Shown piece after piece: positions 8,161 through 57,900 of a stretch of 64,000 nt of DNA. The notes under the pieces are model-generated. The model did not search any database and was not told where the DNA came from. It worked only from the letters and a program-made list of their open reading frames with translations. How positions within the stretch are numbered: position 1 is the stretch's first letter; the number at the start of each line of letters is the position of its first letter. Source of the stretch: Utricularia gibba (taxonomy: Eukaryota > Plantae > Magnoliophyta); assembly GCA_002189035.1 (NCBI GenBank), contig NEEC01000019.1, positions 558,001 to 622,000 of the forward strand. Direction: 5' to 3'. The translations under genes and the position numbers were made by a program.

Positions 8161-10196
8161 TAAATTTTGCATACTTCCACGTGTCTTGTTACAGTCTTTT
8201 TGTAACGTCTCCTAGTCATGGTCCATGAATAGCAGGCTACTTCTCGCGGATTTTGATGAAGAGCAAGGTAAAGAGCACTATTTTCAACCCTATCGGTTCG
8301 AGGAAGTAGCAAATAGTTTGTGACCGAGGTACCGCGACAATGGACAGATAGTGGCCTCTTACCTGCCATTGGTCATTGGCAATAACTCGGCACACAGGTA
8401 GAATACAATTTTAAAGACAATCGATGGCATTCCTCTTGTCTTCTCAATTATTCAAGGGGGAACCACATGAGGCTATTCCCGTGGCCCCTTGTCAATTAAA
8501 GTCTAAGGGAGAGTAGGCTATTCCTTATTCCTATAACCAGCTATTCGGAAGAAATTAGTAAAAACCGAGTAAAGGATAGACAAAAGGAAGAAACAGAGTC
8601 CATTTCCTGGGAATTGCGTCCCGTAGTCAAGGTCCATTACTTGCATTGTAACTTTTATTTCTACACTTCAAAAAACTCTTTTTACAAACATGTGACAATT
8701 TGTAAAAATTTAGTACAAAACACTTTTCGTAAAACTTAACTCTATGAGATCGACACTTGTACTATGCTTTATTGTGTTTAGAGGTGGGTTCGAACCGGAA
8801 CTGCGGTTCAAACCGAAACCGTCGGTTCCGGTTCCGGTTCGGTTCTAAGGGATGGATGTCCGTACGGTTTCGGTTCGGTTCGGCATAATTGGAACCGTGG
8901 AACTGACGGTTCCAAACCGTGAACCGTACGGTTCGGATTTAAAAATAAAAAAAATTAAAAAAATTTAGAAAAAATTAAAAAAATTTAAAAAAATTTAAAA
9001 AAATTTAAAAAAAATTTAAAAAATTTAAAAATATATATTATTTTTTATACTTTTCTCAGGCACACATACGAAGGAAGTGGGTGCTTGAAAAATCTTCTCA
9101 AACAGTGATGGGGTCTAAATTGATTTTCACCTTTAACAAACACCCTTTCCCAAACACACTCACAACAGATATGGGTGTCTGGAAAATGGTCTCAGGTACC
9201 CTCACGACACACTATCTTAAATTACATACACTTATTTTTCATCTTCTAGATTTCTTTTGTTCATAAATGACAATATACATCCATGGCTTTTGAGATGGAG
9301 TATTCATTGTCTTCTTTGAACCAAGCCCATGTGTATCCCACATTAACGCTACCTATGAAATAAATAATTTGATAAGAGTCCAATACATGGACGCGGATTA
9401 TATAGAAACGATGCCCATGTGTATCCTGTATTAACACTACGTATCAAATAAGTAATTTGGTAGAAATCCTACACATGAGGGAATGTGAGTGTCTGGAAAA
9501 TGGTCTAAGCGATAGACGAATATTCTTTATTTATTGAAATTAATGTATAGTAATTAGGATATATAAAATCATTTCATTTTCAAATTTTGATATTCTAATT
9601 AATGCAGCAACAAATTTTTATATTTATGAAAATTAAGAATACTTTCAAAGATTGCGCAATCCCCAAATTTCGGGTACGGGTGCCTAATTTTGCATTTCTT
9701 GTGCCAGTCGCCCACATTAGCGATTTTGGGTTCCTCAAAATTGGAGTATTAATTACACGATGGGTACGCATCGATTCAAACGAGCGGCACACACCTTGTC
9801 TGAAAACAACGGAAGCTATTATCGACAACTTACGAAAGTAGGGATATCATTGCGTGTAATCATTAGCTTATGATTTGGTGTATTAAACCAAATCCCCACG
9901 CACCCATACACAACGCTACACATCACCACCCCACTCCCCACGTTGTCAATTAAAACAACCATAATCCCCACCCATATGGTAAGAAAATTTTCTTACCTCT
10001 TTCCCCCCCCCCCCCCCCCCCAGCCAAAAGCAACCGAATGCCCCACAGTCCCATCACCTACTTGTAGTGTTTTTTAAATTAAACAAGGTAAGTGATTTAT
10101 TTTCCACCATGGGTTGCTGATCTATGTTCCAAATTGAAATACCTTGTCCAGTTATTGTAGTTTGATTTTTTATACAATTCCTATGGGTGTTTGTAG

Positions 10197-11908
10197 ATGC
10201 ACATTTCTGAAAAATTGAGAACTAGGTTCTTGATACCGGGTGAATATGAGATTTGGGACAAAGAACCGGATAAGTTGATTGAGGATGAAATTCCAAACCA
10301 TGTGAGTCCAATGGGATTTGCCTTAAGCACGGAACATTTTCGTTGTGGTTTGCGCTTACCATTATTGCCCTTTTTAGAAGAAATATTAGAATGTTTAGAG
10401 ATTCTTTTATCTCATTTGACTCCAAGATCTATCTCATATATGTTGGCCTTTATTAGTATTTGTGAGGAGTTATGTCTTGAGGTGGAACTTCGCTATTTTT
10501 TTGCTGTGAATGTATGCTTTAGAACTCTAAACAAGAACCACTACACCTTAAAGGGGAAAAAAGGGTTGGTGCTAGTAAAGAATGTGAGAAGAGGATTTGA
10601 AGAATGGTGGACAAGTTTTGTTTGGATATATCCTCCAATGGAAACCAAATTTCCTCAAATTTATACTAATTCGAGCGAAGTAGGCAATGCGAAAGGTAAA
10701 TCTTGCTTTGTATTGTTAGAAGAAATATGAATAAAAATATTCCATATTTTTATTGAAATATTCTATATTTGTATTGAATGTTTTTATTGAAGATATTATG
10801 ATTGAGCGTTTTTTTTAATCTACTATTATTAAAACTATTGTTATTGAATATTTTTATTCAATACCTTTTTCGAATATTTTTACACTTATCATGTTGAATA
10901 TTCTTATTCAATATTTTTGTTGAATATATTGTTAATAAATTTACTTTTATTGTAGGATTTGATACCTTGTCCAAGAGGGATATACAAAATCTCATTCTCC
11001 TCTTCTCAAGTATGCAAAGGAGTTTTGTTGACATTTTACCACCATTTGTGGATGCACTGAGGACAAAACGCTATTGGTGTGGTGTGTTGAAAAATCCTAG
11101 AGTCTCCCAAAAGAATGAAGACTTGTCTAAGAATGAGATGACACAAGATGGGAATGATGTTGAAGGGGACGAGCTCACACATGGTCTCGATGATGTCGAT
11201 GATAGACTTGAATTTATAACAAAGGAGAATGAAGAGCTTCACTACAAGTTGAATTGGTATGAGAGTCGTTGGGTATATACCGGACCTCCTTTTAGTGCTT
11301 CTAAGCCTCAACGAAAGCTGATTATCTTGGATGTAAATGGTGTGCTAGCAGACATCGTTTACAAGGCTGGAGCGTCAAGGTCACGAATCACTTCAGATAA
11401 AATCATATATGGCCGATCAGGTACGTTAACACAATACTTAATTTTGTGTGTTATGTGCATTCACGATTTGTGAGATATCATAGGTAACTTTTCGTGCAAA
11501 TTATGCAATCTTTCTACGTCCACATGCCCGCGATTTTATTAGGTGGTGTTTAGATAATTTTGATGTAGCTTTATGCTCATCCCGTGGGGGGTACGTGTGC
11601 TGCATCTTTTTTTTTTGTTGGTATTTAGAATTGGTGCAAACACTTGCAATTGATTTATTTTGTAGGGAGCAACTACAAGCAATCACTAAATGGGTCTTTC
11701 CACCTTCATTATTCGACAAACTCATTTTCGTATGGGACCAAACCATGACAACGGACACCGGCTACGTGTTCACAACAATCCTAGCAACACGGTTTACATA
11801 AAGGAGTTGAGTCGTGTATGGGCTGTCAACAATGGATTGAACACAAGATATGACCATCACAATACCTTATTAATTGATGATTCACCTCACAAGTCAATGA
11901 AAAATCCG
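10197..11908 (+). pseudogene. Cargo gene A: Transposase_28-like domain fused by splicing to a coiled coil and an FCP1/NIF-like HAD domain (decayed)
   Basis: Exons 10197-10695, 10956-11420, 11509-11590, 11666-11908. Exon 1 has CGLRLPLLPFLEEIL..LSHLTPRS; the exon 1-2 junction is in frame (AAA G|GA TTT). HAD motifs RKLIILDVNGVLADIVY, FLRPHARDFIRWCLDNFDV, FVWDQT, TLLIDDSPHKSMKNP. Exon 3 acceptor reads GCAA, exon 4 has a frameshift near 11770, and no final exon was found. Confidence 0.8.
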
Positions 11909-12069
11909 GTAAGTCATTTATTTTCAATTAGACAGACACTTACAAAATGTGACATTTTGATTATACTGTTGAATTTATTTTAAAATAAATGAATAAATTA
12001 ATGACAATACTTACGAAACAACTTATTTATACTGTATGACGCTTATTTTGATTTTTAAATTAATTTACA

Positions 12070-13350
12070 GGGACGGCACATACATAAAAATGTTTCTTGT
12101 AGGGGCCGCCAAAATATTGAAATACTATTAAATTTGATTACGGATGTGAATTGTTTATTAAACGATTTCCAATTACAATTGGTATCCATATTTTAAAAAA
12201 GATTTTTTCGTGCATAATTATTTTAAATAATTTTATGCTAAAACACAGAATTATAAGTGTGTTGTTGACATAAAATCACATTTTAATTTAAAACATTTTT
12301 AGCAAAAATATGATACGAATGTAAGTTATTGTCTAACTTAACCTCAGATGTTGTGAGGTTTAGTAGAGGAAAACATTTGAGATACAATATACATATACTT
12401 GTGTAAAAAACTTCATTTTTATAATCATACCTTAAATATTCAGCACATTACAATATTTATGATGATAAGCGTCATCATCAAGGACCATTTATATTAAAAA
12501 AAACATAAATTTCCACTTCATGGTTTAGGGTTTTCAGGGTTTTAGGGTTTAGGGTAAATCAAATATCTGAAATATTCCTGCCTTTTTAATATGTTGCAAA
12601 TATGAAATTTTGCACGGCACATACGTAACATTGCGTTTTGTAGGGGCGGCAAAAACAATTTATGGAAACACTCTCAAATGTACTTACGAATGTGAATTGT
12701 TTATTAAATAATTTACAATTCAAATTGACGTCCATTAGATACAAAGTATTTTTTGTATCGAATTTCTATTTATAATCTGAAATTACAAATATATTATTCA
12801 AAGGCAATATAATGACTTTAAAGTTTATAAATAATCATCCACATTTACATTAGACACAAATATATCTTGTTCTCTCATTTAAATGTCAAATATTTTGATG
12901 CTTTATAAAAAAAATATTGAACATATATTTGCAAAGAAACGTGGTTTTTATTATTTTTAACGTTACAATATTGGTGATGATAAACTTCATTACTATGAAC
13001 AAAAACTACTAAAATTTTTAATGTGTAGTTTAATTAAGGGTTTAGGACAATTAAATGTGTAATAAATTCTTGTCATTTTTAAAAAAAATGTAAGGATAGT
13101 TGGATTTTGAGAAGGTACATTCAAACACACGTAATGCGTATGTGTCGCTGAAATATATCTATAACATTTTTTGTTTATAATTTTTAAAATACTGAAAATT
13201 CAAAATTTGGGACGGCACATCAAACAATGAGTATTTTGAAAGTGCCGCAATTTTTTTAATTATTTTAAATAATTGATTTAGACTATATATGGATGTAAAT
13301 TATTCTATGCAATATGATTTTCTGAAAAAGTTGGCATCCATTATATAAGT
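12070..13350. repeat. Three degenerate tandem units (~540-600 bp) inside the hAT element
   Basis: Units start at ~12070, ~12612 and ~13209 with (G/C)ACGGCACAT...(GGGGCCGCC/GGGGCGGC/GTGCCGC), followed by (C/T)G(G/A)ATGT(G/A)AATT and ATCCAT/GTCCAT motifs; a telomere-like GGTTTAGGG patch lies at ~12523-12555. Confidence 0.7.
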
Positions 13351-13692
13351 GTACAACCCTACCGAGTTTACATCACCTTTTGCTGCATACAAAGGCTCTT
13401 CTTATTAGTGTCGTTGCGCTCCTGAAAACCTAGAATTCATCGGCTTAAAATCGGGTAATCTTGTTGTTGCAACTTACATTATTTTTGTGAAATGTATTCT
13501 ATGCATTTTTTGCTGTAGTATGCGTTGTATATTAAGTTGGGTTTAGTTATTACAAATTTTCTTTTCGTATAATTATGTATTTAGTTGGGTTTAATTGCAT
13601 TTTTCATCGTTAATATCATGTTTGTTTTGCTGTTTTCCATTTCCTTATTTTTAGAATTTCATTCTTATTATGTATCCTTTATTGATTAGGGA

Positions 13693-14900
13693 ATGGATAG
13701 ATTTCGTATTAAATACGTCATCCCAACCGATTGGTTGACAATTCCTGCTCCGCAAAACACACCTCTTGACGCCAATCCCCCTCATGAATGTCCCAATGCT
13801 TGGCTTGTGTCTCGTAAAACATTTGATGCTGGTCTTAGGCTACCTATTCATCCCTTTGCTCTTGATGTGCTCACCTATTTGAGATTACCTATTGGGTTTT
13901 TAGCACCATCTTCCTATAGTATTATCTTAACCTTCTTACACTTGTGCGAAGCAGAATATGTAGAACTTTCCTTGTCAAATTTTTTTGCATTATCTCTTCC
14001 AAAAAAAACTCCTACTGGAATATGGTATTTTCAAGGATTACCAAATACTAGATTTCATCAAAGTCTACTCAAATTCGAAGTAAGTCTTTTTAATTTACAT
14101 TATTTTTCCAATATGTTATTTTACTTATTTATTTAACATTATGATAGCACTTCGAAACATTCATGGTGTCATTGAGAGGCGGTCTGCACCAACATCAAGG
14201 CGAAATCGTCATCAGCTTGTTGTTTATGAACAACCCATTCCGCTAAACATCAATAGCAATGAACAACAGGTAAATAAAGTAGGAATATTATTTAAATTTT
14301 TAATTTTTTCTTCAAATAAATAAGGTTTGCAATATAAAAAATTTTTTGTGTAGGAGAATTCTGAACAACAAAATGGAGATGAGGAGAATGAAGTGTCTCT
14401 TCATGAGAAGGCTGAAGTGTATATTAATGAGGAGCTCTCGGTTGCACGCCAACATGACAAAGAACTCATTTTAAACCAATATAAACACATTCAACGGATG
14501 GAAAATGAGGTAATAAAAATGAAACTTATTTTGCTAATACATGTGATAGTTGTTTTTTTATGTTTTCTAATTTAGTTTTTTTTCTCCTTTAGATAGATTC
14601 AGAAGAACAAAAACAAAATGGACGATTCGGTAGCACAGCAATCTATATACAAGGTTGAATTGAAGATGAAAGGCGATGAATTGATTGCTGGACAACAAAA
14701 ATCTATCAACTTTCAATTGGAAATAATGAGGCTGAATGAAAAAATACAGGTGTTAGAGGAAGAATTTCAACTTCACAGATTGCAAGCTCAATTGAATGAA
14801 AACGATGTTGTGTTTTTTTTTTCAAAGAGACATACCTTCTACAAGTGCGGGCACAAGCAAAGATAAAGAAAGAGGTAGAGGCAGATCCAAAAGAAAGGGA
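13693..14900 (+). pseudogene. Cargo gene B: second Transposase_28-like domain followed by spliced coiled-coil exons
   Basis: Exon 13693-14079 (FDAGLRLPIHPFALDVL..FLAPSS), then 14148-14269, 14354-14509 and 14597-~14900. Exons 2-4 join in frame and encode an E/K/Q-rich coil; the exon 1-2 phase does not match, suggesting decay or a wrong site call. Confidence 0.6.
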
Positions 14901-17049
14901 AAAAAATGAAAAGGGTCCGTAACAATGTTGTGTTTTTTTTTTCAAAAGATTTGACTTATTTTGTAATATTATATTTCAATCGTGACAATCTAATTATTTC
15001 GCAAATGTCGCTTAATTTTCTAATAACTAATTGACATTTTTTACAAAAATTATAAAATTAAACATAAAAGCAAACATACAAATTACAAAAGAGATAATAA
15101 CAATTTTTTTTTCAGTAAAATTGAATTATTTCGTATTATTATGGCTAGCTCCTACCAAAGTACTTATTTAATAGGTGCCGTAACAAGAAAATTATTTCAT
15201 ATCACTTTTTTATACGTCCTACGAAATCCTCTAATGCATAGATATCGCTTCAAATTTTTAATAACTGAATCATGTTTTTCTAAAATATTATAAAATTGAA
15301 CATAAAAAACAATCATACGAATTAGAAAATGGACGATAACAATATTTATTAATTTTTAGTGAAATTAACTTATTTTGTATTATATTATATATTGAACTTA
15401 TACCAAATTATTTATTATATATTGAACTTATACCAAATTTATTTATTTCATATTATTATATTAAACTCTCACCAAATTACTTATTTTACAGATGATGTTA
15501 ATATAATATTGTTATGTTTCATTTTTCTGTGAAATTGTAAGACTAAATTCTTTAAATGTATTCTCGTTTTAATAATAAAAAAATATTTTCTCAGAAATAT
15601 TAAAGATTTAAACTAAAAATAATTTATTAGAAATATAGTTAAAAAAATTCTTTTTTGTACATATATATTAATTTTATTTAAAATAAAAATTAATTCTTTA
15701 AATATTTAATATTTATTAAAAATTTCACTTCCAGACACCCATAAGGATTCATATGAGTGCCTTGAAAGCACCTACAAACAGTAACCGCGGTTCTGGTTAC
15801 GGTTCAATTCGTAAATCTCGGTTTCGGTTTTGAATCGAAATCGTTCGTACGGTTCCGGTTTCAGTTTGTTTCAAGCCTTCCGGATACGGTTCCAAACCGA
15901 AACCAGAACCGTTACCCACGGCGAACCGCGGTTTTGGAATCGACGGTTCGCTGGAACCGTTCGGTTCCGAACCGAACCCAGCTCTAATTGTGTTTTACGT
16001 GTTTTCTAAATTAAAATTTATTGAGAAAACGATACGCAACATAGAGATAGACCGAAAACCCGAAAAAGCTTCAAAATCTCTAAAAGCCTCACTCAAAAAT
16101 GTGAAGAAAAGAGAAATACCTGGGAAGCTTGTGGACAGCACCGAGTTTCGTGACGGTGGAAGTGTGTCAGAGTAGGCGGGAGCGGAGAACACAAAGGATG
16201 TAAGAGAGCAGTGAAAGGAGGTGAAGTGTACAATGAAGGGAGGAGAGGCAATTTATAGAGGGGATTCTCAGAACATGAAGGGACATGACGATTGGGTTAC
16301 AAAAAATGGACAGGAAAACGTGGCATGTCTTGGATGCAACATGTGGCGAAGGAACTTACTAAATCGGAGGGAACTACAAACAGGAAATCGATATATGATT
16401 AGACATTGAGTTGGTGATTTTGATCTGCCAATCTATCGCGAGTACTCATCTCGGCAAATCAAAGAGACTGAATGGTGGGCCTTAAATTGGCATGTGCCAC
16501 ATGGAGGCGAGCCCGGGAGGTACTTATAAATCTATAGTTGGTGGATGACAAAATCAACTTCCCTTGAACGAAGTCAGTTGGAAAAGGTCTCAAAAGCATT
16601 CTAACAACCTACTATAGGTTACTATAGGTTGACAAACCAATAAGTGTTAGAACTAGGAAGCAAAGGCCATTTTGATAGTCTGAAAAGTAGCCAAATTATA
16701 GGAATGTCAAAGCAATCGACAGGTATTTGTTAGCAGGACCATAGTATGGCTACCAAGCATAGAAAGCAATTGACAACTGCAGAATTTGATTGGATCGGCT
16801 CTTCCTATAAATATAACAAAATCTGAAAAAGAAAAGGTTGAACTCCCTACATTTTGAGCTCGTATTCCTCTCCTTTTTTCCGTTAATGAAACCCCCTCTT
16901 CTGACGAGCTTTGACAGCTCCGTGGTTTTTTCATCTTATAGTGGTTTCCACTTTAAAACTCTTGTGTCTTTTTATTTTTTTTTTGTTCTCAAAACCAAGC
17001 CAAAATCGGAATATAATCTATCGGAGTGTGTCAATCCACATTCATGACT

Positions 17050-22030: not shown

Positions 22031-23059
22031 ACACACAACAAATCCTTCTTTTTTGCACTTTCACCTCCAATTAGTATCACCTCCAATTGTATTTTCTTTG
22101 GTTTCTTTGGTGTGGGAAGCTATTGAAGCAAACGATCCTCCAACATCGAGGATGCCTCATCAAACCAATTAAAACGACATGAAGACTCTCTTTCTAAACA
22201 CTATTATGCTTTAAATGCACTCTTTTCCTTTGTTGATAAGTCAGTATTCTATCATATTATGGCCCATAAATCTCCCCAGCTAAGTGGAAAAAATTGGGGG
22301 AAATTAGTATTTTACACGTGTCAGAGTTTTTTATTTGCAATTTACCGGAACTTTTTTTCTAATTTGTAAATTACCTTACTTTTTTATTTGTATTTGCGAA
22401 ATGCCTTAGATTTTAGGATTAAATTTGGTAAATACATGTACTGGAGGAAAGAGGTTGGCAAAATACCATAACTTTTTGTTTTATTGGTATTTTACATGGG
22501 TTATAATTTTTCATTTGTAATTTATTGGAACTTTTTGTTTTAATTTGTAAATTACTTATTTTTTTTATTTTTCTTTGTAAAATGACTTAGATCTAGAAAT
22601 TCATTTATTGAACCGCATGATATTGTCTTGACTATTTAAGAACTCCATAATATTCAAAAATAATTATTGTTATTGGTGAATAAAAATATATAACATATTT
22701 ATAAATATCCACAATCGTTATTATCATTTAAAATTTATAATTTTCATATAATAAATTAAATTTTAATGAACATAACCATGAGTGCTTATAAAGAAAAAAT
22801 GATTTATTATAAAACTAAAATATTTCGAATTAAAATATTATAAATAAAATATATTATCAATTTTGATTAAAAACGTGATTTCAATTGTTTTTCATAATCA
22901 ATATTAAATATGAGTAAACAATTTTTTTACATAAATTTTTAGTAAAATATAGATAATTTGATGTAATAATAATTTATAATCATAAATAAATTAATATAAT
23001 GAACAGAAAATTAATTCAAGTATGAAAAATGATTAAAACATAAACTATCAATGATGTAA

Positions 23060-24470
23060 TACGAATAATAGTATTCAAAAGATCAAAATGGATATATAGT
23101 TTTTAAAAATAACAGCAATCAATACATATAACACTCAATAATACGTTTATAAATTTGCCAATGTGGATCAGTCTCATCAATTAGCTTCTGACCGAACCGG
23201 AATTAGCTGACGTAACTTCCCACATCATTTGCATCTAGAACACCCTGAAGGAACAAATGAAAGACATTGTAGGGGGCAAGCAAATTGTCCATACCTTCAG
23301 TGCATTTCCATGAGATAGGAAATATTGCATTGTTAACCTAGAAAAATTGCATTAGATAGATTTATAGAAAAAATTTAAGAATAAAGAAATTTAATAAACA
23401 ATTAAAAGTCACTAACCGGGTTTAAAATCGATTTATAAGGAGAGTCATCCACTAACAATGTGTTGGTAGAGTTGTATTTGCCTTCAAATACTTCATTCTC
23501 CCAAATATATCGTAGAGGTTTCAACTTCATAGTATCAAATGCGTTATCGATCCGCCTCTCGGAAGTGATTATGCAATTGCTTTGATCCCATAAAAACACC
23601 AAATTCTTCTTGATATTATCTCCAAGAATGTACTCTACCAATGGCTTGAGTGTATCCCTATCACCAAAAATATTATTAGTAATTGAACACAAAATAAATC
23701 AATTTAATTTCATAATACAATATTTAAAAAATGACTTACATTCCCCTCGATGACCATATTACTACATCAAAATTTGCCATACACCACTCCAAAAAGGATC
23801 TAGAATATGGTCTTAAATACACTGAAAACAAAAATGGTGAATTTTATATGTAATTTAAAAAAATCAAACAAGTAAATATACTAACCTCCTCGTCCCTTAA
23901 TCATAATTGGAGGCGTAGGGTCTCATCTATTTCTACGATATACGACATCGGCTAGTACCCCATTAATATCTAAAACGAGTAACTTCCGGCACGTCATGGA
24001 AAAATAGTTAGGTTGCACAATTAAGCTTCCAGCTCTTTTTTCGTAATTACGAAGAGTGCTAGTCAATCTCTCTATCTCTGATTGTGCTTCTAATAACTCC
24101 AATTGTAGTTTTTGTACCTATAAATAAAATAGTAAATATGAGAAGAAAATATAAAATTTATATAAATCATTTAAAAATAAGTAACATACCATTTCGAGTA
24201 AGGTGTCAACATGTGTAGAAGATGAAAAATCATAAGGCTCGGGAATGTCTCGTGGCACATTTTCGACATTCGGAATTTCCGGAGATAGTTGTCGTCGAGA
24301 CGCACTCCTTTTAGTGCCATACCAAATACGTCTAGTATTTCGAGTATCCATAAATGGTGACTCAACTTCTTACCATTTCAATTGTTTACCATGAACCAAG
24401 ATAATCAAAGAAACTCTTGACGCTTCACCTAATTCATTGACACCTTCATAAAAATAAATGTTTATTATCT
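23060..24470 (-). pseudogene. MULE accessory gene: coiled coil plus full-length FCP1/NIF-like HAD domain (two nonsense codons)
   Basis: Exons ~24470-24190, 24117-23886, 23821-23740, 23657-23417, 23337-~23060, all GT-AG and in frame. Reads SPFMDTRNTRRIWYG...VQKLQLELLEAQSEIERL...RKLLVLDINGVLADVVY...VYLRPYSRSFLEWCMANFDVVIWSSRG...FLWDQSNC...TLLVDDSPYKSILNP|VNNAIFPISW...FGQKLIDETDPHWQIY. Stops AGA-TGA and AGC-TAA. The 5' end is uncertain. Confidence 0.85.
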
Positions 24471-24708
24471 CTGAAAAAAGAGAAGTTCATTCTATTAATT
24501 TTTATTCACTATCTTAATTTGTATATAAATATTCTTGGTTTATATTTAGATTTTTACGTTTACAATTGTTATAAAAAAGATTTTCAAAATGTATTAGTTG
24601 TATTAACTATATAATAAAACATAGAGATATAAATCCATAATACTTATATGAACAAGAATAGGAATACGACAACATAATTCATGACTCCACAATTTATTTC
24701 TGTTTTCC

Positions 24709-27700
24709 TCACTTAAATGTATGTTTTACCTTTTCAAAGAGCGAAGTACGGCGTGATCGCGTCCCTTGAACCGTAGTCTCATCAGAGAATGGCACTTGGG
24801 TTGGATAGGAAAGGGACAATGATAGTCGACCAGCCGAAGTAGTTGCCCTTGGCTCTGTAGGTTGTCCTCCCTCGAATGATGAATGTCTGTAGGTTGGATT
24901 CGCAGGCGAGAGTACATTGGTTGGAAGGATATCGTCTTGCCTGACATATGTGTCTTCTTCATTAATTTCTGTAACTCTTGACTTTCGCCTTCCTCTTTGT
25001 TGGAAATCTACCGGTCCTCTAAATCTGGTTGTTTGGTCACGACCCAACTTTGTTCTTCTTCTTGATGAGTCAACAACCAGCTCGAATGCTGATTCTGCCC
25101 ACTGACTCTCATCACGTATAGGGCGAACTTCACATTTGTATGTATTCACTAAGTTTGATGTCAGGTAATAATCACTTGTCTTCAATATAGGATTTAAACG
25201 GAATTGATGACAACCCTGTGGAATAAAATATTAATTAGATTGAGGATTCTTAAATACTAGTACTAACTGATTTTATAGAGCTTACCATTTGCGCATGAGA
25301 ACAAGGATATCTGTCTATCTGCCATATACCGCAGTCACAAGTTTGATCTCGAACATTGACTCTATATATTCGCATGGAATGATGCCCCCAAGATTGTACC
25401 TCACATATTTGACTGTTCACATCATATGATATGCATTTAAGCATTGTTAACTGATTCAATGCTTCTTGATACTTCATGTGGATTTTGTATCCCAAGGGAA
25501 TCCCATTTTTCTGCATTGATAGTGCCTCTGATCTATAACGTACGAAATATTCACGTGTCTTTTCGAAGGTCACCTACAAAGTTATGGTAACATCAAAATT
25601 TATTCAATAATGAAATTAAATTGCAACTCGTATAACCTCTGCAAGTGCAGTTGGAGGTAAATGTCTTGCTGATCATAAAACGCTATTCATACACTCAACA
25701 TGATTTGTAGTCATGAGTGTGTGCCTGTATTTTAAGAAAACATGTTAGCTAAAGTAAGTAAAACTAACAAAAAAAAACGTTTTACCGATGTCCACCATCA
25801 TAAAACAATGTCCACTCCTCTTTGGATATTTTTTCTAAATAGTGATAGGCATCAATCGAATGTCTTGCTATCTCACTCATGGCCATCCTGAAATCAGTTT
25901 CGGTTCTAGCATAAGAAGCTCTTTTGATCCATTGTCCCAAAGCTTTTGATTTCGAATGAACATGTGACATACAATTTTTTCTGATATGGAAGTTGCACCA
26001 TCGATGTATGCCATAGGGAGGGCTAAAGCGCTTGTAACTATCATAAGCACCAATAATCCCAGAAGCACGATCAGAGATAATACATACATCTTTCCTTTGA
26101 CGAATAACATGATTGGCAAGATTATAGAAGAAAAATTCCCAATCCTCAGTTGATTCTCCATATGCGAATGCATAGGTGACTGGGAAGACACAATTGCTAG
26201 CATCAACAGCAACACAAATCAGCAACTTGTAGTTGTATCGTCCATATAGGTGAGTTGCATCAACACAAAGCACGGGTCGACAGTATTGAAATCCTTCAAT
26301 AGCAAACCTGAAAGCCCAAAATACATTTCGCAACACCTTCTTCCCATCTAGATCACCACCATAACGCCATATCACAATTGTGCCTGGGTTTTGAGTGCGA
26401 AGCTCTCTTATATCGTGGTAGCTCAGTAGTGGAAGTTTCCCACATTCCATAATGAATCTCAGAGGCTCTGGTTATACAAGCCCATGCCTGCCAATATGAT
26501 ATCTCATAATACCATTGCTGCTTTACATAAGCTTGCACAAACTTAACATCTATCTTTCCATCCAGAAGTGAAACCAAACGTGGTGCGATGAACTTGATTG
26601 TAAGATTAACATTGGATGTTGCAAGATCAGCTGTGACATCGCACGTATGCGGTTCTACAAGCTTTGAGATCTTCCAAGTGTTAGATCGTGTCTGAAATCT
26701 TGCCCAGAGATAAAATGGACAATTAGAAGTTTTTTCTTTCGTCTGACGACAAATGCAAGCATATGTCTTTTTATCACTTGCCACCACACGGGTCTCTCGA
26801 TGTGCTATAGAAGTATTGTAGAGAGCAACTGCATCAATAAGGGTCTGTTTATCTGGAAAATGCATCCCTTGTCGTAATTGATTTGATCCCTCAGCATATG
26901 AATCATTGTGAACAGATATATCAATATCATCAGCATATAAGAAGTCCATTTGATCCGGTGATTCAATTTGAGTTTCAAAACAAGTTTCTGATGGATGATC
27001 AAAAATCCCTGGAATTTCATTATCCTCAAAGTCAGATTCATTGATATCTGAGGGATCATTATCAACATACATCGCCCCCTCTAAATCAGACTCTTCAATA
27101 GGGACTGTTGAGGTCTCATACGTTTGATTTACGTGGCCTCTATTATCATATATCTCATCTGAAACATATTCATGATCACCTGAAATAAAAGTTTAAATAC
27201 GAAATACTGAATAAAAAATAGTAATGTTAAAAAAATAGAAAGAGATTAGAGAATTTAATCAATACAAGAATGTGAAGATGGAATTCTAACCATAACGAAA
27301 CGAAGGCTCCCAAAAAGGATCAAATGGTGCATCCAAGTCTTGTGTTGGATAACTGCTATTGTTGCACCCCTCACTAGTTTGTTCGTTTAGGTTGAGCCGC
27401 CAATCTGCAATTATAAAAAAGTTCATGCTATTTTATATCACAACTTATGATAGAAAACATCAAAATTTTTCTAAATTTCACTTGGAGCATGACTACTAGA
27501 AATCTCATCCCATCGTGGGTTTGTTTTGACGAATAATTCAATTCCATACTCTGAATTGTTAGGTGATAAAATATAGCGTAATACGTCGGTACTTGAAATC
27601 TCCATAAAATTCGCATTTCCAGATTCCGCATCATAGAATTTTGCATTTAAAGTAAATTGAAAATGCAAGGGTGACATTTGGAGAGTCTCACCTATAATTT

Positions 27701-27833
27701 CAATAAGTTTATCAAGAGTAGATGTGCATTTAGCCTTGATGATTTTCACAGGATCTCTATCGTATGCAACGTATCCAGATGCATTTTGAATTAGATTTCC
27801 TCCGTAGAACACTTTGACAAGAACCTTACTCAT
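24709..27833 (-). pseudogene. MuDRA-like MULE transposase, disrupted
   Basis: N-terminal KVFYGG segment; MuDR DNA-binding GMHFPDKQTLIDAV; DDE residues CVDATHL, ISDRASGI, NHVECMNS; SWIM CDCGIWQIDRYPCSH. Frameshift near 26410 (overlapping ORFs 26353-27072 and 25782-26450) and an in-frame TGA near 25680. Confidence 0.9.
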
Positions 27834-28387
27834 TATCCTTTAATGAAAAAAGAAATTTCAGAAGAGAAACTAATGAAAAAAATTGCTTAATAGTGAAATA
27901 CAATACCTATTACATGAGATTGTCAAATTCTACTTTAAGATAGCATCTCATGTGGTCGAGAAATTGAGAAAAGAATTGATACGATTCATACTAAGGAAGC
28001 CTTTTAATATAGAAGATAAGAACAAATATTTTATATTGTGTGGCTAAGATTTATAAAGGATAATATGAAGATAAATAAGTGATGGAAAATAGTGGGAACG
28101 GATATCATGAAAACCAAATGGATAATATAAATTTCAATTTGTAATTTAAACCTTTTTAAACTTTTTTCTTATATAGTATTTAATTTTTTTCTTGTCTCAT
28201 ATTTTAAAAATATTACTTTAAAATTTATTATTATAAATTTTAAAATTAAAAACTTTATATAAAAAAATCACATTAGTAAAATGAAATAATTGGATGCTGG
28301 CACGTATGCAGCACCCATAGCTGGGCACTGCTTACCACGTTTGCAGCACCCAGAGCTAGCATATTGGAAGATCAATCGGCCAAACTA

Positions 28388-28525
<138 letters not shown>

Positions 28526-29988
28526 TCAAGTGAAATGTGAATAACACGTCTCTCTTTGAAAGAAGGGGCGCTTCCGGTTCTGTCGGTGCTTGAAACAATT
28601 TGGTCTTCTCCATATTACTATATCTCTAGAGCTGGCCGCTGCTTGTTAAAATAGCCAATGTAAATATAAGTTTTACATTATTATACAAAGCAATTTATAG
28701 ATCTAAGTTATTTTACAAAGAAAAATAAAAAAATATGTAATTTACAAATTAGAATAAAAAGTTTCGGTAAATTACAAATGAAAAATTAAAATAAATAAAT
28801 AATAATATAGCAATTAATTATTAATTTTTATTTCGTAAATAACTTATATCATTTATTATATTACATTTTTGTAAAAAATTTTAAATAGTTTAATAGTATA
28901 GGTTTCTTAATATCATTATTAATAATAAATTTTATTATTTAATATAATTTTAAAAACATTATACTTCATATTCTTTTGTTTTTTGTGTAAAAATCAATTT
29001 CTTCAACATTTGCCTATGCCAACATAAAATAATATGCCCATCATGAGTTTTTTTTATTTAAAAAATAAGAAGTTCAGTATTTTGCAAATGAAAACTCAGA
29101 TTATATGTAATTTTATAATAAAAAAAACTTTCAGTATTTTACAAATAAATGTAGTCTGACACAGACATTTACCAAATTTTGACTTGTAATACATGTAAAA
29201 TATTAATGAAATAAAAAGCTCCCGTATTTTACAAACATCTTTCTTCTGACACATGTATTTAACAAATTTAGCCGAAAAAATTGCAAGTTGATTATCAAAG
29301 AACCAATCGCACCCGAAAGATAAGTCTTCTAAATTTCAGAAAAGAGTTTGAGGGTTTACGTATGACTGAGTCTGAAAAGGTGAAGCAATATATTGATAGA
29401 TTAATGTTGATTATAAATCCAATAAGATTACTTGAGGTGTCTTCCTTTTCAAGCTGAGGGCCTTCTACAGGGCTCGTAGTTCTGGCAGGAGATAAAGAAG
29501 TTCAGGATTCTCTTATTGTTAAAAAAATTTCAGTAATTATACCTCAAAAATTTGATGCTACGATCACCTGAATTGAAGCTATATCTGATTTAACTGATAT
29601 GACCATTTCTGGCCTTGTTAGTGTTTTAGAATCTGCTAAGATAATTTTTATTGTTTCTTATTTGCCTCAAAAAATTCCGATATCTTGGTTTTCTGTTAAG
29701 CATTGTCATGTTGTGTTGTTTTGTGGTGTCAATTTGAGTCAGTCATTACTGAGTTCACTATCCTGCTTGCATGCATGATCCATTTAGTAGAGTAAACTTG
29801 TAATAATGAGATCTAAGCATTTTAGTATTGCATTTTCTTCATTTGCTCTTAAAGAATTAGAGTGACAAGTTTGTATGCAGCTGTTAGTGTGCATATTGGA
29901 TTTCTAAACATTAGGATCATTAATCTCATCTTAGGACAATACTACATCCAGTTTGCATTTAGTTTACATTTGGAAGTTCGAAAATAAG

Positions 29989-30065
29989 CCACCGTTTGTA
30001 GACATACCAAATATTAGTTGTATTTGATGTGGCACTAAAAGCAGTACGACTCGATGATAATAATC
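29989..30065 (+). pseudogene. Third fragment of the TE-borne HAD accessory gene (N-terminal motif only)
   Basis: Reads PPFVDIPNISCI*CGTKSSTTR, versus SPFMDTRNTRRIWYGTKRSASR (MULE copy) and PPFVDALRTKRYWCG (hAT copy), with identical spacing; clear nucleotide similarity to the reverse complement of 24285-24355. Confidence 0.6.
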
Positions 30066-30369
30066 ATGGTAAATTTCCAACGTCCAAGACGCACCAGAAT
30101 GAATATTCATCCTCATCAGAATGAATAGTCACGAGGCAAGAAAAGGTAGGCATATTTAAAAAAAAAGTATTTTGTAAAAATACAACGTTAAATGAAGCAA
30201 TGAAAACTCTAGGGATTCATCACTTTTTGTGTTTGAAATAAAGAGTAAGTTAGAGTTATAAGGTCTTGAAACGATAAGAAAGAATCAAACTTTAAGTTGA
30301 ATGCATATTGGCTAGAATTTAGTATAGTGCTAGAATTTTAAACCATATGATTAGAAGATAAATATTTCT

Positions 30370-36289: not shown

Positions 36290-38175
36290 CTAGCCAGAAT
36301 TCGGAAAATTGTATTCCTTGATCATGTCGTTGGTGATTGATATGGGGTCAGCTACTTCAGCTGCTTCTCCATGATTTCGTGTTTCACTGTCAGCGTACCT
36401 GTATTGTGTAGCTACTACAATGAAGGCGATCAGATTTATGGAGCTTAAAGCCGCCAGAACCCAGAAGTATCTGTCCAAACGGCTTCTGTGCAATGTCTGC
36501 TGAAACCAGCTTCTCCTGCTGCCGAGCCTCTCGCTAACTTCGCCTACCACATACACAGCAAGCACACTGCACATGTATCCTATGCCATACACGAACTTGG
36601 CGAAGTATTCCAGGTACTCAGTCATGGATTCTGGTGCCTCAGCACGATAGAAAGCTGCAACGCTCTGTTCTAGGAAGGAATCCAGCCCTGCAAGGAGAAT
36701 GAACTGGAAAGTTAACCAAAATATGCTCATGGGAATGGTTGTTCCTGGGTGATCCAAAAGCTGATGGCTTCTGATAACATTCAGTCTCCTGTTCTCGACT
36801 AGTGCCGCGGCTATGCAACACAGGATGCTGGAGATCATGGCAAATGCGATTCCGAGGGAGGGTGCAAAGCCTCTCTTGTTGTACTCATGCATCATCTTAC
36901 TGAACACAGCCTTGGCAGATTTGAGTATCAGAAGAAGGACTTGCGGAGGAAGTGACAATTTTCCTACTCTCTTGTTCATGGTCTTTGCTTGCTCTACGAA
37001 GTAGGTATTCCCAGTTGAAGATACAATCCCACAAACGATGAACGTGAGCCCCATGGGAATCATTCGAACGGTAATCTTGGCTTCTTCCACCTCCTGTATT
37101 GTGCACTTCTTCCATTCCTTGCAGTCATAATCCTCTGGTGACATAATGGCTGCCTTGTGTAGGCATCTGAGATGAAGCAGCAGGCATCTTCTGATGACTG
37201 GAAGATGGACTGAATCATAAAGAATTTACACACATAGGTACCTGAGGCAACGGGTATGTGTAAAGCTCTGATGCGAACCATCTTCCCCCACCCTGTACTG
37301 GCGATGGTCCAGCGGAAAGGGCTTGCAGATATTGCAGGCAGAAGCGATGAACACTTTGATTACACACATGATCGGGCTGCCACGGAGACAGGGCTTGTAG
37401 TATGTACACCATCCCGTCAAAAAGAGAACTGTGGCAAGAAGAGTGACGATTGCCGTTATTCCGAACCGGATAGACCATGCTTTTATGTATGGAATCCCGA
37501 TGCCTCCAGCTAAAGCCACAACAACCACTGCCAATAGACACCACAGTTTCAAATGGCGCAACCTGCTGCGTCTTTCTTCCCCACTGGCTTGTTGTTCTTT
37601 AAGATACGGCTTCAGAGCAACATCGTGTCCGGCAATTCCGATGGCAACAAATGCCAATCCAGAGTAAAGGAGAGCTTTCTGGGTGTAGCCTATGCATTCT
37701 GGCTTAAAACTTCTGCAAGTTTTGGTCACTCTCGCCAGGATGGGTGGCGTGGACATAGCAACAAATCCAATTCCCTGAAGAAAACACAGCAGAATTCAAA
37801 GAATAGGATAAAAAAGACAGCGCCCCAGAATAAGGATCAGGTGATGAACTCACAACGCTGTAGGCAATGCTAGAAATTACAAGTGCCCCAAATTTTCCAA
37901 GAACAATATCCGCAAAGAAGAGGAAGAAAACAGGCAGGATTCTGGAGATTCCTCCCCAGAAGTTGATAATAGCAGCAGCGTGGGTGAAACTTAGATTCCA
38001 AACACTAGTTAAGTAATCTTGCAATACAAAGAGAGCGAGCTCAACAAATATGTCTGCCAAAAGGAGAGCTGCAAGAACAAGTCAGAGTAACAGAAAATGT
38101 AACAACAGAGAATTGGAATCTGATCTGAATGAAGTGCTTACTATTAATCCGAACGAAGCTGTGGGTTGTTTCCAT
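36290..38175 (-). CDS. NPF: NRT1/PTR family (NPF, NPF5-like) transporter, 552 aa
   Basis: Exons 38175-38142, 38068-37854, 37774-37242, 37166-36290 (1659 nt, in frame, GT-AG). Motifs YLTSVWNLSFTHAAAIIN, LRCLHKAAI, CTIQEVEEAK, SIFWLTFQFILLAG, SRLDRYFWVLAALSSINL. Confidence 0.92.
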
Positions 38176-54900: not shown

Positions 54901-57900
54901 GACATGAACAATTGTTGAGATACTTATTCTTAAAAGAAATATGTCTCCAAACTGAAACAGAAGCATGTCCAAGATGACAATGCCAATTTCTAGAAATATT
55001 AATAGAACAAGTTCATACTGAACCAATTGAAAGATTATTAGAAGAACCATGCAAATAGTAAAGTTCGCTCCGAATGAATCCTTTAGCAATCACCACCTTA
55101 CTCACTGGGTCTTATAGAAAACAGCCATCAAGATAAAAAAAAAATACAATGTGCAAGTTTCCTTGTTTCACAATTTTTTGGATTGATGCCAAATTAAAGT
55201 GAAATCTAGACACTTGTAAAATATTGGATAAGGTAGGGTCAGGTTGTAGAGGGAAATCCCCAACATCATCAAGGGGTAAGCGTTGATTGGTTGGTAGGAA
55301 AACATTGAGGCCACTATCAGGTTTACAAATATTTCTCAAATGTGTGTGTGTTCCACACATATGCGAACTAGCACCTGAATCCAAAGTCCAATCAGATGGG
55401 TGATTCAAGAAGGATGAGGAGTGCATACCAGCAAAGTGTCTTTAACCCTTAGCACCATCATTTGAATCAGTCTCCCTAGTAGGATGCATGATGTTCTTGT
55501 GTTGTATTTGATAAAGAGACCATATCGAAGTAGCAAAGTTGAGAAAATCGGGAGAAAAAGAAATTCCCTAATCAATGGAAACCTCAAATGGTGTTCCAGT
55601 GTAATCTTCAATCATGTGAGTAGCTTGTCCTGTAGGTTTGCACCAATTTTCAAGATAACCATTCAACTTATAGCATTTCTCCCATGTTTTTTCTGATCCT
55701 TCGAGAAAAAGATTCACTCGGCCCATCATACGACAATATGAATAATGATCTTCAGACCACTTCCCATTTGATGTTGCACCCAAATCTTTTGTTTTGGTAG
55801 CAATGGTGGCGGCGGAGAGGATAGACATAGTTTCATCATTGCTAGGATGCACAAAACTTGAATCCTTGCATCACTTAGAAGACAAAACAAGTTTATACGC
55901 ATCATCTACCGTAAGAGGTGGGCACGTAGCAATGATTTGATGCTTCAAACAGTGAAAAGAGTTGTTTAATCCATGTAAAAATTGTTGAAGATGATCACGA
56001 TTTTCCCAAGCACAAAGTTGATCCCCAATGTCTCCAGGAACCATCGGCAATGGACATAGAGCATCAAGCACATTCCAAATCCACTTCAATTTGGTATAAT
56101 ATATGACAACACTATCATTTCCTTGAGTTAGAGACTACAATTTTCAATGCAAATGGAAAACTTAGGGCTCGATAGAAGCTCCAAAATGACACTCAATCTC
56201 TATCCATAGATCTCTAGTCGTAGGGGCAAAAACAAAAGAATATGCAATCTCCTGCTCCATGGAATTGGCGAATATCATCAATCAATTTTTTTCCATTCCC
56301 GCAACCTCAGATGTCTAGTGTCTTCTCCACCCATGGGACTGCGTTCTCTCACTTGCTGTGATGGCTGCTGCAAATGGACCATATCTATATGATGTAGGCA
56401 ATCTTGGACGCTCAAAGCAATCCTTACGGCCATCGACCACACACAGTAATTATGCCCGGTGAATCGATTGAAGAGAAGGGAAAAAGGGGGAAGAAGAGTC
56501 ATTGGCCATGCCAACCTTCTTTGATACCATGAACAATGAATCGAATGAAGAAAATTGATCAACTTCTTATTATGAAGAAAATTCATATTTATGCACAAAG
56601 TTTAACTAAAAATAAGAAATTATTTGGGAATTTTACACAAATAGTCATATTTTCAACATTCATTCCCCATCATCCTAACCATATTTTTCATTTTGTACAT
56701 ATCAACCAATTTAATCATTAAAATAATATATTTATAATTTATTATTTTATATATTAAAAAAATAATAATATATTTTTTTATCTCATCTATCCAACTTACC
56801 CCAAAAAATTCTCAAAAATATAAATTATAAATGAGACTTCTTTTTGTAAAATTCTCAAAGTTGAAATCTATGTCCCATATTTCTTATTTAATAAATTATT
56901 ATACATTGATAAAATAATATATTTTTAATTTATCATTTTATATATTAATAAAATAATAATTTTTGTATATTATAAAAGTAAACCATAGATTACCTATAAC
57001 TATTATCATATGTAAAAGTCCATCGTTATCTATAAATCGTAGCAAGATAGTCATAAGCATTCTTATTCTTCTCTTTTATCCTATTCATGAAAATCCAAAA
57101 CTTTGATTTTTTGGATGTCATTGTAGCATTCCAGAATAAATTATGAGACTCTTATTTAAACTTAGCTCTAAAGTTCCCACATAAATGTTTTATGCAATAC
57201 CAATGAGCTTCTTGTAGCTTTTGAAAGACTAAAAAGCTATTGATTGTCTTACGTATCCCTACTTTTCAATCAGAGATAATAAATGTAGTAGGAGAATAAG
57301 ACTTGATAACATTATCCACTAAATTGCTCAAAAACCAAAGCCAAGACTGGAACAATTCTTCCTCAACAATTTCAAAGGCTAGAGTAACAATAACTTTATC
57401 ACCATCAATAGTTACCATAATAAGTAACTTGTGTCGTTATCGTGAGTACAATTGTGTAGTATCAATAGAGATAATCAGTCGGCAATATTTATAAGCACGT
57501 ATACAAAGTCTAAACACCTTGAACACATGATGCAACATAATCTCACCAAAGTTAGTACGAAAATGATCATATTTAACAATAGTACCTCAAATAAATGAAA
57601 ATGAACATATTAAATATTTATTCAAACATGTAGAGTAACAACAATATGAAATATCTGTCATAGCATCTCAAATATCTTTTAGAGATGTTGGCATATTAAG
57701 CATTAGGGTTTCCCATGTGTCATATAAATCTCGAATACCACACTTGATTCCAAACCTTGCTCTCTTGTATATTGGTTTAGTCTTAAGTTGATTTTCCATC
57801 AATGTGATCACATCAAAAACAGAAATATTAGGATCCATTTTTAGAGTCTCCATAATTGCTGCTGCAATGACATTTATTCGCACATTCGTATGACGAGTAG

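What the first reader, a model, noticed from the sequence alone, without database searches (positions are those of the whole stretch)
23060..24470. A MULE carries a spliced FCP1/NIF-like HAD-domain accessory gene directly behind its transposase
Seen: a five-exon gene, co-oriented with the transposase and ~240 bp after its last stop, inside TIRs with a perfect 9-bp TSD. It encodes a PFxD..WxG motif, a coiled coil and a complete FCP1/NIF-like HAD fold (KLLVLDINGVL, VYLRP, WSS, FLWDQ, DDSP, IFP, FGQ). All splice sites are intact and only two stops occur, both consistent with C>T (CGA>TGA, CAA>TAA), so it was probably coding recently. Known: MULEs carry accessory genes such as ULP1 proteases, PMD domains and VANC anti-silencing factors; FCP1/SCP-type HAD enzymes dephosphorylate the RNA Pol II CTD. 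I do not recall a HAD domain described as a standing MULE accessory gene. Inference: a transposon-maintained regulator (phosphatase, phospho-CTD decoy or anti-silencing factor) rather than random Pack-MULE cargo. The second Asp of DxDxT is Asn (DINGV), so it may be a pseudophosphatase; as I recall, the related host family also has DxNG.
Basis: partly seen in the sequence, partly recalled or inferred. Interest (0 to 1): 0.88.

Follow-up and report, generated by a model that had tools for sequence, protein, structure and literature searches.

The report
Dead transposon copy carrying phosphatase-like gene
A decayed copy of a many-copy plant "Mutator-like" jumping gene carries, behind its broken transposase, a now-dead spliced gene whose phosphatase-like domain was once copied from an ordinary plant gene and then apparently kept in working order inside transposons for a long time; I found no description of such a passenger gene, and its function is untested.

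Summary
On the minus strand at 24351-23119 lies a five-exon gene with four GT-AG introns. It has two in-frame stops, against 19 and 28 in the other frames. It sits inside a 7-kb TIR-MULE (22296-29273, 9-bp TSD GAAAAAATT), 357 bp downstream of the transposase's last ORF.

Spliced residues 98-308 match a profile of plant FCP1-homology (NIF, UBLCP1-like) proteins end to end (224 bits). Identity to them is 40-43%.

It is not a fresh one-off capture. Contigs from four DNA runs of the same species cover the whole element, HAD gene included, with many 80-99% alike variants. Three introns sit exactly at conserved host intron positions. The gene keeps 41 of 50 host-invariant residues but only 32% of the others.

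A diverged sister copy (10197-11908) lies in an hAT-like element. It shares the non-host N-terminal module, one intron loss and two rare substitutions, and it also carries a Transposase_28 domain that the focal copy lacks.

DxNG is family-wide in host proteins, so it is not a mark of a TE-specific pseudophosphatase.

This copy is dead: two stops in the gene, a frameshifted transposase, and no RNA run listed as holding it. Function is inferred only. The scan had already flagged the same gene family elsewhere in this genome, in MULEs and Harbingers.

The parts
22287..22295 (.). Left target-site duplication GAAAAAATT
   Evidence: Exact 9-bp (10-bp) match with 29274-29282
22296..22606 (.). Left long terminal inverted repeat with subterminal direct repeats
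   Evidence: Inverted-repeat pairs I2-I5, alignment, direct repeats. Contigs of other copies lose similarity at 22299-22302 (table 7)
23119..24351 (-). Five-exon pseudogene: N-terminal PFxD..WxG module, short helical/coiled segment, complete NIF/UBLCP1-like HAD domain. Exons 24351-24190, 24117-23886, 23821-23740, 23657-23417, 23337-23119
23923..23925 (-). In-frame stop TGA (codon 119, variable loop after motif I)
23203..23205 (-). In-frame stop TAA (codon 284). Host proteins have Gln here, which fits CAA>TAA
24709..27833 (-). MULE transposase remnant in five ORF pieces: 27833-27471, 27072-26353, 26450-25782 (MULE domain), 25573-25250 (SWIM), 25185-24709. A frameshift lies near 26409-26450
   Evidence: Pfam PF10551 E 1e-14 and PF04434 E 1e-7. 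ORFs overlap in different frames. Other copies carry two extra bases after 26409 (table 4)
28687..29273 (.). Right long terminal inverted repeat
29274..29282 (.). Right target-site duplication GAAAAAATT
10197..11908 (+). Diverged sister copy of the gene, inside an hAT-like element. It has a Transposase_28 domain, PFxD..WxG module, coiled coil and NIF domain up to DDSP..NP. One frameshift; last exon missing

Best explanation
This is a decayed member of a multi-copy TIR-MULE family. Downstream of its transposase and in the same orientation, it carries a transposon-borne accessory gene.

Origin. The gene's HAD domain came from a DNA-level capture of a plant 'FCP1-homology / UBLCP1-like' NIF gene of the DxNG subfamily; introns were retained. 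It was joined to a non-host N-terminal module (PFxD..WxG plus a coiled coil). In the sister copy that module is preceded by a Transposase_28 domain.

History. The chimeric gene then persisted and diverged inside DNA transposons of more than one superfamily. The HAD core and motif residues stayed under purifying selection. That implies the protein did something useful for the elements or their carriers.

Present state. In this copy it is a pseudogene: two premature stops and no Transposase_28 part. The transposase is frameshifted.

Mechanism (inferred, not shown). The protein is a phosphoprotein-binding or phosphatase module, brought by its N-terminal part to a chromatin or transcription target. 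It would modulate host control of the element, in the way VANC or the ULP1 domain of KI-MULEs are thought to.

Shown: anatomy, homology, multi-copy status, shared ancestry with the sister copy, differential conservation. Inferred: past function and any biochemical activity.
For: Gene and domain:
- Gene model and reading frame.
- End-to-end match to the host HAD profile: 224 bits, profile positions 1-214 of 218, no hit in 200 shuffles. Identity is 40-43% to proteins that score 58-146 bits on Pfam NIF.
- MULE and SWIM domains, TIRs and TSD.

Multi-copy status:
- Hundreds of contigs 80-99% alike lie over the whole element in four DNA runs.
- In run X11, 8-27 distinct contigs cover single sites.
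- Summed depth is about 9 at the element edge, against 280-560 over the HAD gene and 200-450 over the transposase.
- Differences are dominated by C>T and G>A.

Capture at the DNA level:
- Host introns at focal residues 131, 159, 183, 240 and 260 are conserved in Salix, Glycine and Deinandra. All but 131 are also found in the monocot Typha.
- The focal gene has introns exactly at 131, 159 and 239/240 and lacks the ones at 183 and 260.

Past selection:
- The focal copy keeps 41 of 50 host-invariant residues, against 50 of 156 at other columns.
- The sister copy keeps 30 of 38, against 27 of 100.
- Motif I Asp, motif II Ser, motif III Lys and motif IV DD are all kept.

Common origin with the hAT-borne sister:
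- Joined in the tree with SH-aLRT 97.
- Each falls in the same 34-row clade when the other is left out.
- Shared F>W where 251 of 256 hosts have F, and shared loss of a Lys kept in 257 of 261 hosts.
- Shared absence of the intron at 183.
- N-terminal modules align at z 5.9, with 0 of 1000 shuffles reaching the score.
Against: - This copy is dead.
- No listed RNA run holds it.
- No intact copy was seen, and no dN/dS among copies could be computed, because the genome could not be searched.
- The two window copies sit on long branches, so their joining in the tree alone could be an artefact.
- Summed contig depth is not a copy number, and no displayed contig bridges the HAD gene and the transposase in another copy.
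- Differential conservation would also arise if a fast-evolving host gene family were captured repeatedly.
- Motif I is DxNG, so catalysis is doubtful, though this holds for the host family too.
Confidence: 0.7

Rival explanations
1. Functionless cargo. A host NIF gene was transduplicated once and simply amplified with the element, as in Pack-MULEs and most captured fragments. The protein never served the transposon.
For: The copy has stops, the transposase is broken, and no RNA run was listed as holding it. Reviews state that pseudogenisation is the usual fate of captured sequences (PMC13317346). The strong C>T/G>A decay is typical of silenced repeats.
Against: - The whole domain with working splice sites is present, not a fragment.
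- At 40-43% identity to every host relative found, only two stops have accumulated, and 82% of host-invariant residues are kept against 32% of the others.
- A sister copy only about 30% identical, in another kind of element, shows the same pattern.
- Neutral drift to that distance would have destroyed the frame.
Confidence: 0.17
2. A lineage-specific, fast-evolving host gene family (Transposase_28 - coiled coil - NIF) lives in repeat-rich DNA and is captured again and again by different DNA transposons. The selection seen acted on host copies, not on transposon-borne ones.
For: The gene occurs in two different element types in one window. Unchecked notes of the scan report it in Harbingers too. 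Contigs of other copies break at 22608-22609, the inner edge of the TIR (table 7). A 17-nt inverted repeat brackets the gene.
Against: - No free-standing copy was seen.
- Both copies in the window lie inside TSD-bounded elements.
- The public protein collections searched returned no protein closer than about 43% over the domain, and none of the listed NIF hits carries PF04195.
- Depth over the HAD gene matches that of the transposase.
Confidence: 0.1
3. The gene is not part of the MULE. It belongs to a separate small element or host segment that came to lie between the MULE's ends by nesting or rearrangement in this copy only.
For: A 17-nt, 94% complementary inverted repeat (22988-23004 / 24485-24501) brackets the gene. 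Depth is lower in its immediate flanks than over the gene.
Against: - There is no TSD beside that repeat. About 0.2 such pairs are expected by chance in this AT-rich stretch (my estimate from base composition).
- Paralogous contigs cover the flanks and the junction regions 24124-24458 and 24523-24959 (table 8).
- Lower depth in non-coding flanks is expected at an 80% likeness cut-off.
Confidence: 0.03

Closest known systems
KAONASHI (KI-)MULEs / VANDAL elements with a transduplicated ULP1 domain and the VANC anti-silencing gene
   Same: A MULE that carries, beside the transposase, a spliced accessory gene containing a domain captured from a host enzyme. The gene is conserved over long periods and spread in many copies (PMC13317346; PMC2528002).
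   Different: The captured domain is a HAD/NIF phosphatase fold, not a ULP1 protease or DUF1985-type VANC. The element is a TIR-MULE with long TIRs, not a non-TIR MULE. No anti-silencing activity or target motifs are shown here. The same gene also sits in an hAT-like element.
Plant 'FCP1 homology domain-containing protein C1271.03c-like' / 'ubiquitin-like domain-containing CTD phosphatase 1'-annotated NIF proteins (Pfam PF03031). Nearest solved structure by profile: UBLCP1, 3shq
   Same: The whole HAD domain aligns end to end. DxNG(L/V), WSS, the Lys of motif III, DDSP and FGQ are shared, as are three intron positions.
   Different: Only 40-43% identical, on a very long branch. Two conserved host introns are missing. 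A non-host N-terminal module is attached. The gene lies in a transposon, is multi-copy, and is a pseudogene here.
Pack-MULEs (non-autonomous MULEs carrying host gene fragments)
   Same: Host-derived sequence between MULE TIRs, amplified with the element.
   Different: The element carries a transposase gene. The cargo is a whole domain with intact splicing and conserved key residues, not a fragment chimera close in sequence to its parent gene.
Transposase_28 (PF04195) 'putative gypsy type transposon' proteins
   Same: The sister copy and a neighbouring paralog in the window carry this domain followed by a coiled coil. The focal gene shares the module that follows it.
   Different: The focal copy has no detectable PF04195 part. 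A fusion to NIF was not seen in any listed public protein.

Membership tests
NIF / FCP1-like HAD phosphatase domain (PF03031) | Significant match to the family profile over the whole domain | tested here: met
   Single exons: only exon 3 hits, at 19 bits (cut-off 21.8). Spliced model: 40-43% identity over residues 98-307 to proteins that score 58-146 bits on PF03031. It scores 224 bits on a profile of 20 such domains, covering positions 1-214 of 218. The spliced protein itself could not be given to Pfam.
NIF / FCP1-like HAD phosphatase domain (PF03031) | Motif I DxDx(T/V), with nucleophile Asp and acid/base Asp | tested here: not met
   The focal gene has D-I-N-G-V. The first Asp is kept and the second is Asn. 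The same DxNG is found in nearly all of about 98 plant relatives.
NIF / FCP1-like HAD phosphatase domain (PF03031) | Motif II Ser/Thr, motif III Lys, motif IV acidic pair | tested here: met
   WSS, the K of 'LKPLRYIW' and DDSP align with host-invariant columns. Assignment of these columns to the HAD motifs is from knowledge of SCP1-type enzymes, not tested.
Mutator-like element (MULE) | MULE transposase domain and SWIM zinc finger | tested here: met
   PF10551 E 1.1e-14 and PF04434 E 1.2e-7. The reading frame is broken.
Mutator-like element (MULE) | 9-bp target-site duplication and long terminal inverted repeats | tested here: met
   GAAAAAATT on both sides. TIR arms of about 300-590 nt at 73-91% complementarity in blocks.
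Pack-MULE | Non-autonomous element without a transposase gene, carrying host gene fragments | tested here: not met
   Transposase remnants occupy 24709-27833. The cargo is a whole domain.
VANDAL / KI-MULE accessory genes (VANC, ULP1) | Accessory protein with VANC-type or ULP1 protease domain | tested here: not met
   No such Pfam family among the hits for any piece of the gene or the other ORFs of the element.
Transposase_28 - coiled coil - NIF gene family of this genome | N-terminal PF04195 domain | tested here: not met
   Absent from the focal element. The upstream remnant is not significant (z 1.1). Present in the sister copy (E 1.6e-9).
Transposase_28 - coiled coil - NIF gene family of this genome | Shared PFxD..WxG module, intron pattern and derived substitutions in the NIF domain | tested here: met

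The most novel reading that the evidence does not exclude
DNA transposons of several superfamilies in this plant (MULE and hAT-like here; PIF/Harbinger by unchecked notes) share one long-lived, exchangeable accessory gene. It is a chimera of a retrotransposon-associated domain, a coiled coil and a host-derived UBLCP1/FCP1-like HAD module. It acts as a transposon-encoded regulator of host transcription, proteasome or silencing machinery. That would be a new class of TE counter-defence or host-manipulation factor.
Probability: 0.2. Interest if true: 0.8.

Novelty: new variant of a known kind. Interest (0 to 1): 0.55.

Why it matters
Accessory genes of plant DNA transposons are few, and the ones understood (VANC; mudrB from my own knowledge; the ULP1 domain of KI-MULEs) bear on how elements escape silencing. 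A HAD/NIF phosphatase-like domain kept under constraint inside transposons, and shared between superfamilies, would add a new type of captured host function. It would also give a handle on an uncharacterised, angiosperm-wide DxNG branch of the FCP1/UBLCP1 family. This particular copy is only a fossil, so its value is as one more dated, well-delimited member for a family-wide study.

Tried and rejected
- Pfam on single exons gave only one sub-threshold NIF hit. The spliced protein could not be submitted because of its stops.
- A word-indexed search with the 96-aa exon-4 ORF found nothing.
- The profile search (A2) returned only host-type NIF proteins.
- The transposase ORF search gave two weak hits, from Capsicum and Impatiens, so neither the species nor related MULEs could be identified.
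- No MULE or Transposase_28 sequence lies within 10 kb of the two closest host genes, in Deinandra and Lactuca.
- A single host protein hit no PDB chain. Only a 20-sequence profile reached UBLCP1.
- The ESM Atlas search on the N-terminal module gave scores of 0.80 or less, which is uninformative.
- The RNA run search listed seven small runs, none holding the stretch.
- The upstream 40 codons (24352-24480) do not align significantly with the Transposase_28 exon of the sister copies.
- No nested-element signature (TIR plus TSD) was found around the HAD gene.
- Literature searches for HAD/NIF/CTD phosphatase together with MULE, Mutator, transduplication or transposon found nothing relevant. Two papers on TE gene capture do not mention phosphatases.

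Full report
**Observation**

The finding lies on the minus strand. Six-frame translation and splice-site mapping give five exons: 24351-24190, 24117-23886, 23821-23740, 23657-23417 and 23337-23119. The four introns are GT...AG, 64-82 nt long and 12-19% GC, against 39% GC in the exons.

The spliced frame has 311 codons and two internal stops: TGA at 23925-23923 and TAA at 23205-23203. The other two frames of the same exons have 19 and 28 stops. 2000 shuffles gave a mean of 21.5 and never fewer than 10. The reading frame is therefore real and only recently broken.

From the first ATG, the distance to the stop of the last transposase ORF (24709-24711) is 357 bp.

**The element**

Minus-strand ORFs between 27833 and 24709 carry a MULE transposase domain (PF10551, E 1e-14) and a SWIM finger (PF04434, E 1e-7).

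Long, imperfect inverted repeats with subterminal direct repeats lie at 22296-22606 and 28687-29273. They are flanked by the exact duplication GAAAAAATT at 22287-22295 and 29274-29282.

Contigs from other copies in public DNA runs stop matching at 22299-22302, which independently marks the left end (table 7). The HAD gene is thus inside a TIR-MULE of about 6,978 bp.

The transposase is broken. Two ORFs overlap in different frames around 26353-26450. Several contigs of other copies carry two extra bases after 26409 (table 4).

**Domain identity**

Pfam on single exons gave only a sub-threshold NIF hit for exon 3 (19 bits). The tools do not accept a protein read through stops, so I took another route.

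- An exhaustive HMMER search with exon 4 found 419 proteins at E 0.001 or better.
- The best of these are plant proteins that score 58-146 bits on PF03031.
- The sources name them 'FCP1 homology domain-containing protein', 'ubiquitin-like domain-containing CTD phosphatase 1' or similar.
- The spliced model, with X at the stops, aligns to them over residues 98-307 at 40-43% identity, with E down to 4e-58.
- It scores 224 bits on a profile of 20 of these domains, covering positions 1-214 of 218. None of 200 shuffles scored.
- By profile, the nearest solved structure is UBLCP1 (3shq, E 2e-7).
- The Asn in place of the second Asp of motif I is not a peculiarity of the transposon copy. Nearly all of about 98 aligned plant relatives read DxNG.

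**Origin**

In host genes of Deinandra, Salix and Glycine the domain is interrupted at positions equivalent to focal residues 131, 159, 183, 240 and 260. The monocot Typha shares all of these except 131.

The focal gene has introns exactly at 131, 159 and 239/240 and lacks those at 183 and 260. It was therefore copied from genomic DNA, not from mRNA, and later lost two introns or came from a paralog without them. No MULE or Transposase_28 sequence lies near the two closest host genes examined.

**Not a one-off**

Logan contigs of four DNA runs labelled with the same organism were laid on 22250-28100 at 80% likeness or more. Between 27 and 1528 contigs per run matched, spread over the 99+, 95-99, 90-95 and under-90% classes.

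In run X11, 8-27 distinct contigs cover single sites. Summed depth rises from about 9 at the element's edge to 280-560 over the HAD gene and 200-450 over the transposase. Differences are dominated by C>T and G>A, as expected for methylated repeats.

Summed depth is not a copy number, and the displayed contigs are too short to bridge gene and transposase. Still, the HAD gene is clearly as repeated as the rest of the element.

**A sister copy in another kind of element**

tBLASTn of the spliced protein against the window finds a second, about 30% identical copy at 11048-11947 on the plus strand.

- It is preceded by an exon with a Transposase_28 domain (PF04195, E 1.6e-9).
- It has one frameshift and no last exon.
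- It lies in an element with hAT-like ends (TAGAG[G/C]TGGGTTCG) and an 8-bp duplication ATTGTGTT at 8771-8778 and 15987-15994.

The two copies share several features:

- The non-host N-terminal module 'PFxD...WxG' followed by an acidic stretch and a helical segment (local alignment z 5.9; 0 of 1000 shuffles reached it).
- The introns at 131, 159 and 239, and the absence of the intron at 183.
- Two rare substitutions. Both have Trp where 251 of 256 host proteins have Phe, and both have lost a Lys kept in 257 of 261 hosts.

A maximum-likelihood tree joins them (SH-aLRT 97) on long branches. When either is left out, the other falls in the same 34-row clade. The tree alone could be long-branch attraction, but the independent characters make common descent from one chimeric ancestor the better reading.

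The focal copy has no detectable Transposase_28 part. It is a 5'-shortened version.

**Past selection**

Against the 20-sequence host alignment, the focal protein keeps 41 of 50 invariant residues but only 50 of 156 at other columns. The sister keeps 30 of 38 against 27 of 100.

The motif I Asp, the Ser of WSS, the Lys of 'LKPLRYIW' and DDSP are all kept. Divergence to 30-43% identity with nearly intact frames and this contrast is what purifying selection produces. Neutral decay would not give it.

The stops are recent. The TAA replaces a Gln conserved in hosts, which fits CAA>TAA.

**Function**

Nothing here shows activity or expression. No RNA run was listed as holding the stretch, and both genes of this copy are broken.

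The host family itself is uncharacterised as far as I could find, and it has a non-canonical motif I. 'Phosphatase' and 'pseudophosphatase' therefore remain open for host and transposon proteins alike.

My best guess is inference only. The protein would be a phosphoprotein-binding or phosphatase module targeted by its N-terminal part, which helped the elements in some way, analogous to VANC or the ULP1 domain of KI-MULEs.

**Literature and earlier notes**

Searches combining HAD, NIF or CTD phosphatase with MULE, Mutator, transduplication or transposon found nothing relevant. A 2026 review of gene capture by plant transposons and the grapevine cut-and-paste survey do not mention phosphatases.

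The scan has already flagged this gene family several times on other DNA of the same genome, in MULEs and PIF/Harbingers. Two follow-ups reached similar conclusions. I used these notes as leads only. The in-window sister copy was checked here.

**Verdict**

This is a fossil copy of a transposon-borne, long-maintained HAD/NIF accessory gene. The gene is not restricted to MULEs, its function is unknown, and it has probably not been described.

Noticed in passing
window 8771-15994: hAT-like non-autonomous element: 8-bp TSD ATTGTGTT and ends TAGAG[G/C]TGGGTTCG. It carries the Transposase_28-coiled coil-NIF sister copy (10197-11908) and a second Transposase_28 + coiled-coil gene without NIF (13693 to about 14866).
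   Followed up: partly
window 29980-30096 (+): A third, heavily decayed fragment of the PFxD..WxG exon ('PPFVDIPNISCI*CGTKSSTTR'), 70% complementary to focal exon 1. It lies about 700 bp outside the MULE's right end, next to what reads (by eye, not scanned against Pfam) like a Copia gag fragment (29281-29700).
   Followed up: partly
window 22988-23004 and 24485-24501: A 17-nt inverted repeat, 94% complementary, brackets the HAD gene almost exactly. There is no TSD beside it. About 0.2 such pairs are expected by chance in this AT-rich stretch. Unexplained.
   Followed up: partly
window 26409: Several contigs of other copies of the MULE carry two extra bases (AG) here. The focal copy therefore seems to have a 2-bp deletion that frameshifts its transposase.
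   Followed up: no
window 56993-57586 (-): A second, 30% identical MULE transposase fragment elsewhere in the window.
   Followed up: no
window 36290-37756 (-): Two large ORFs of a PTR2/NPF-type transporter gene (PF00854): an ordinary host gene near the transposon cluster.
   Followed up: no
P0001-P0008 (public proteins, e.g. Erigeron canadensis): Long plant proteins (588-2055 aa), of which those scanned (P0003 was not) carry two NIF stretches; two of them (P0006, P0008) are also fused to DUF724. They were the top exon-4 hits by E-value.
   Followed up: no
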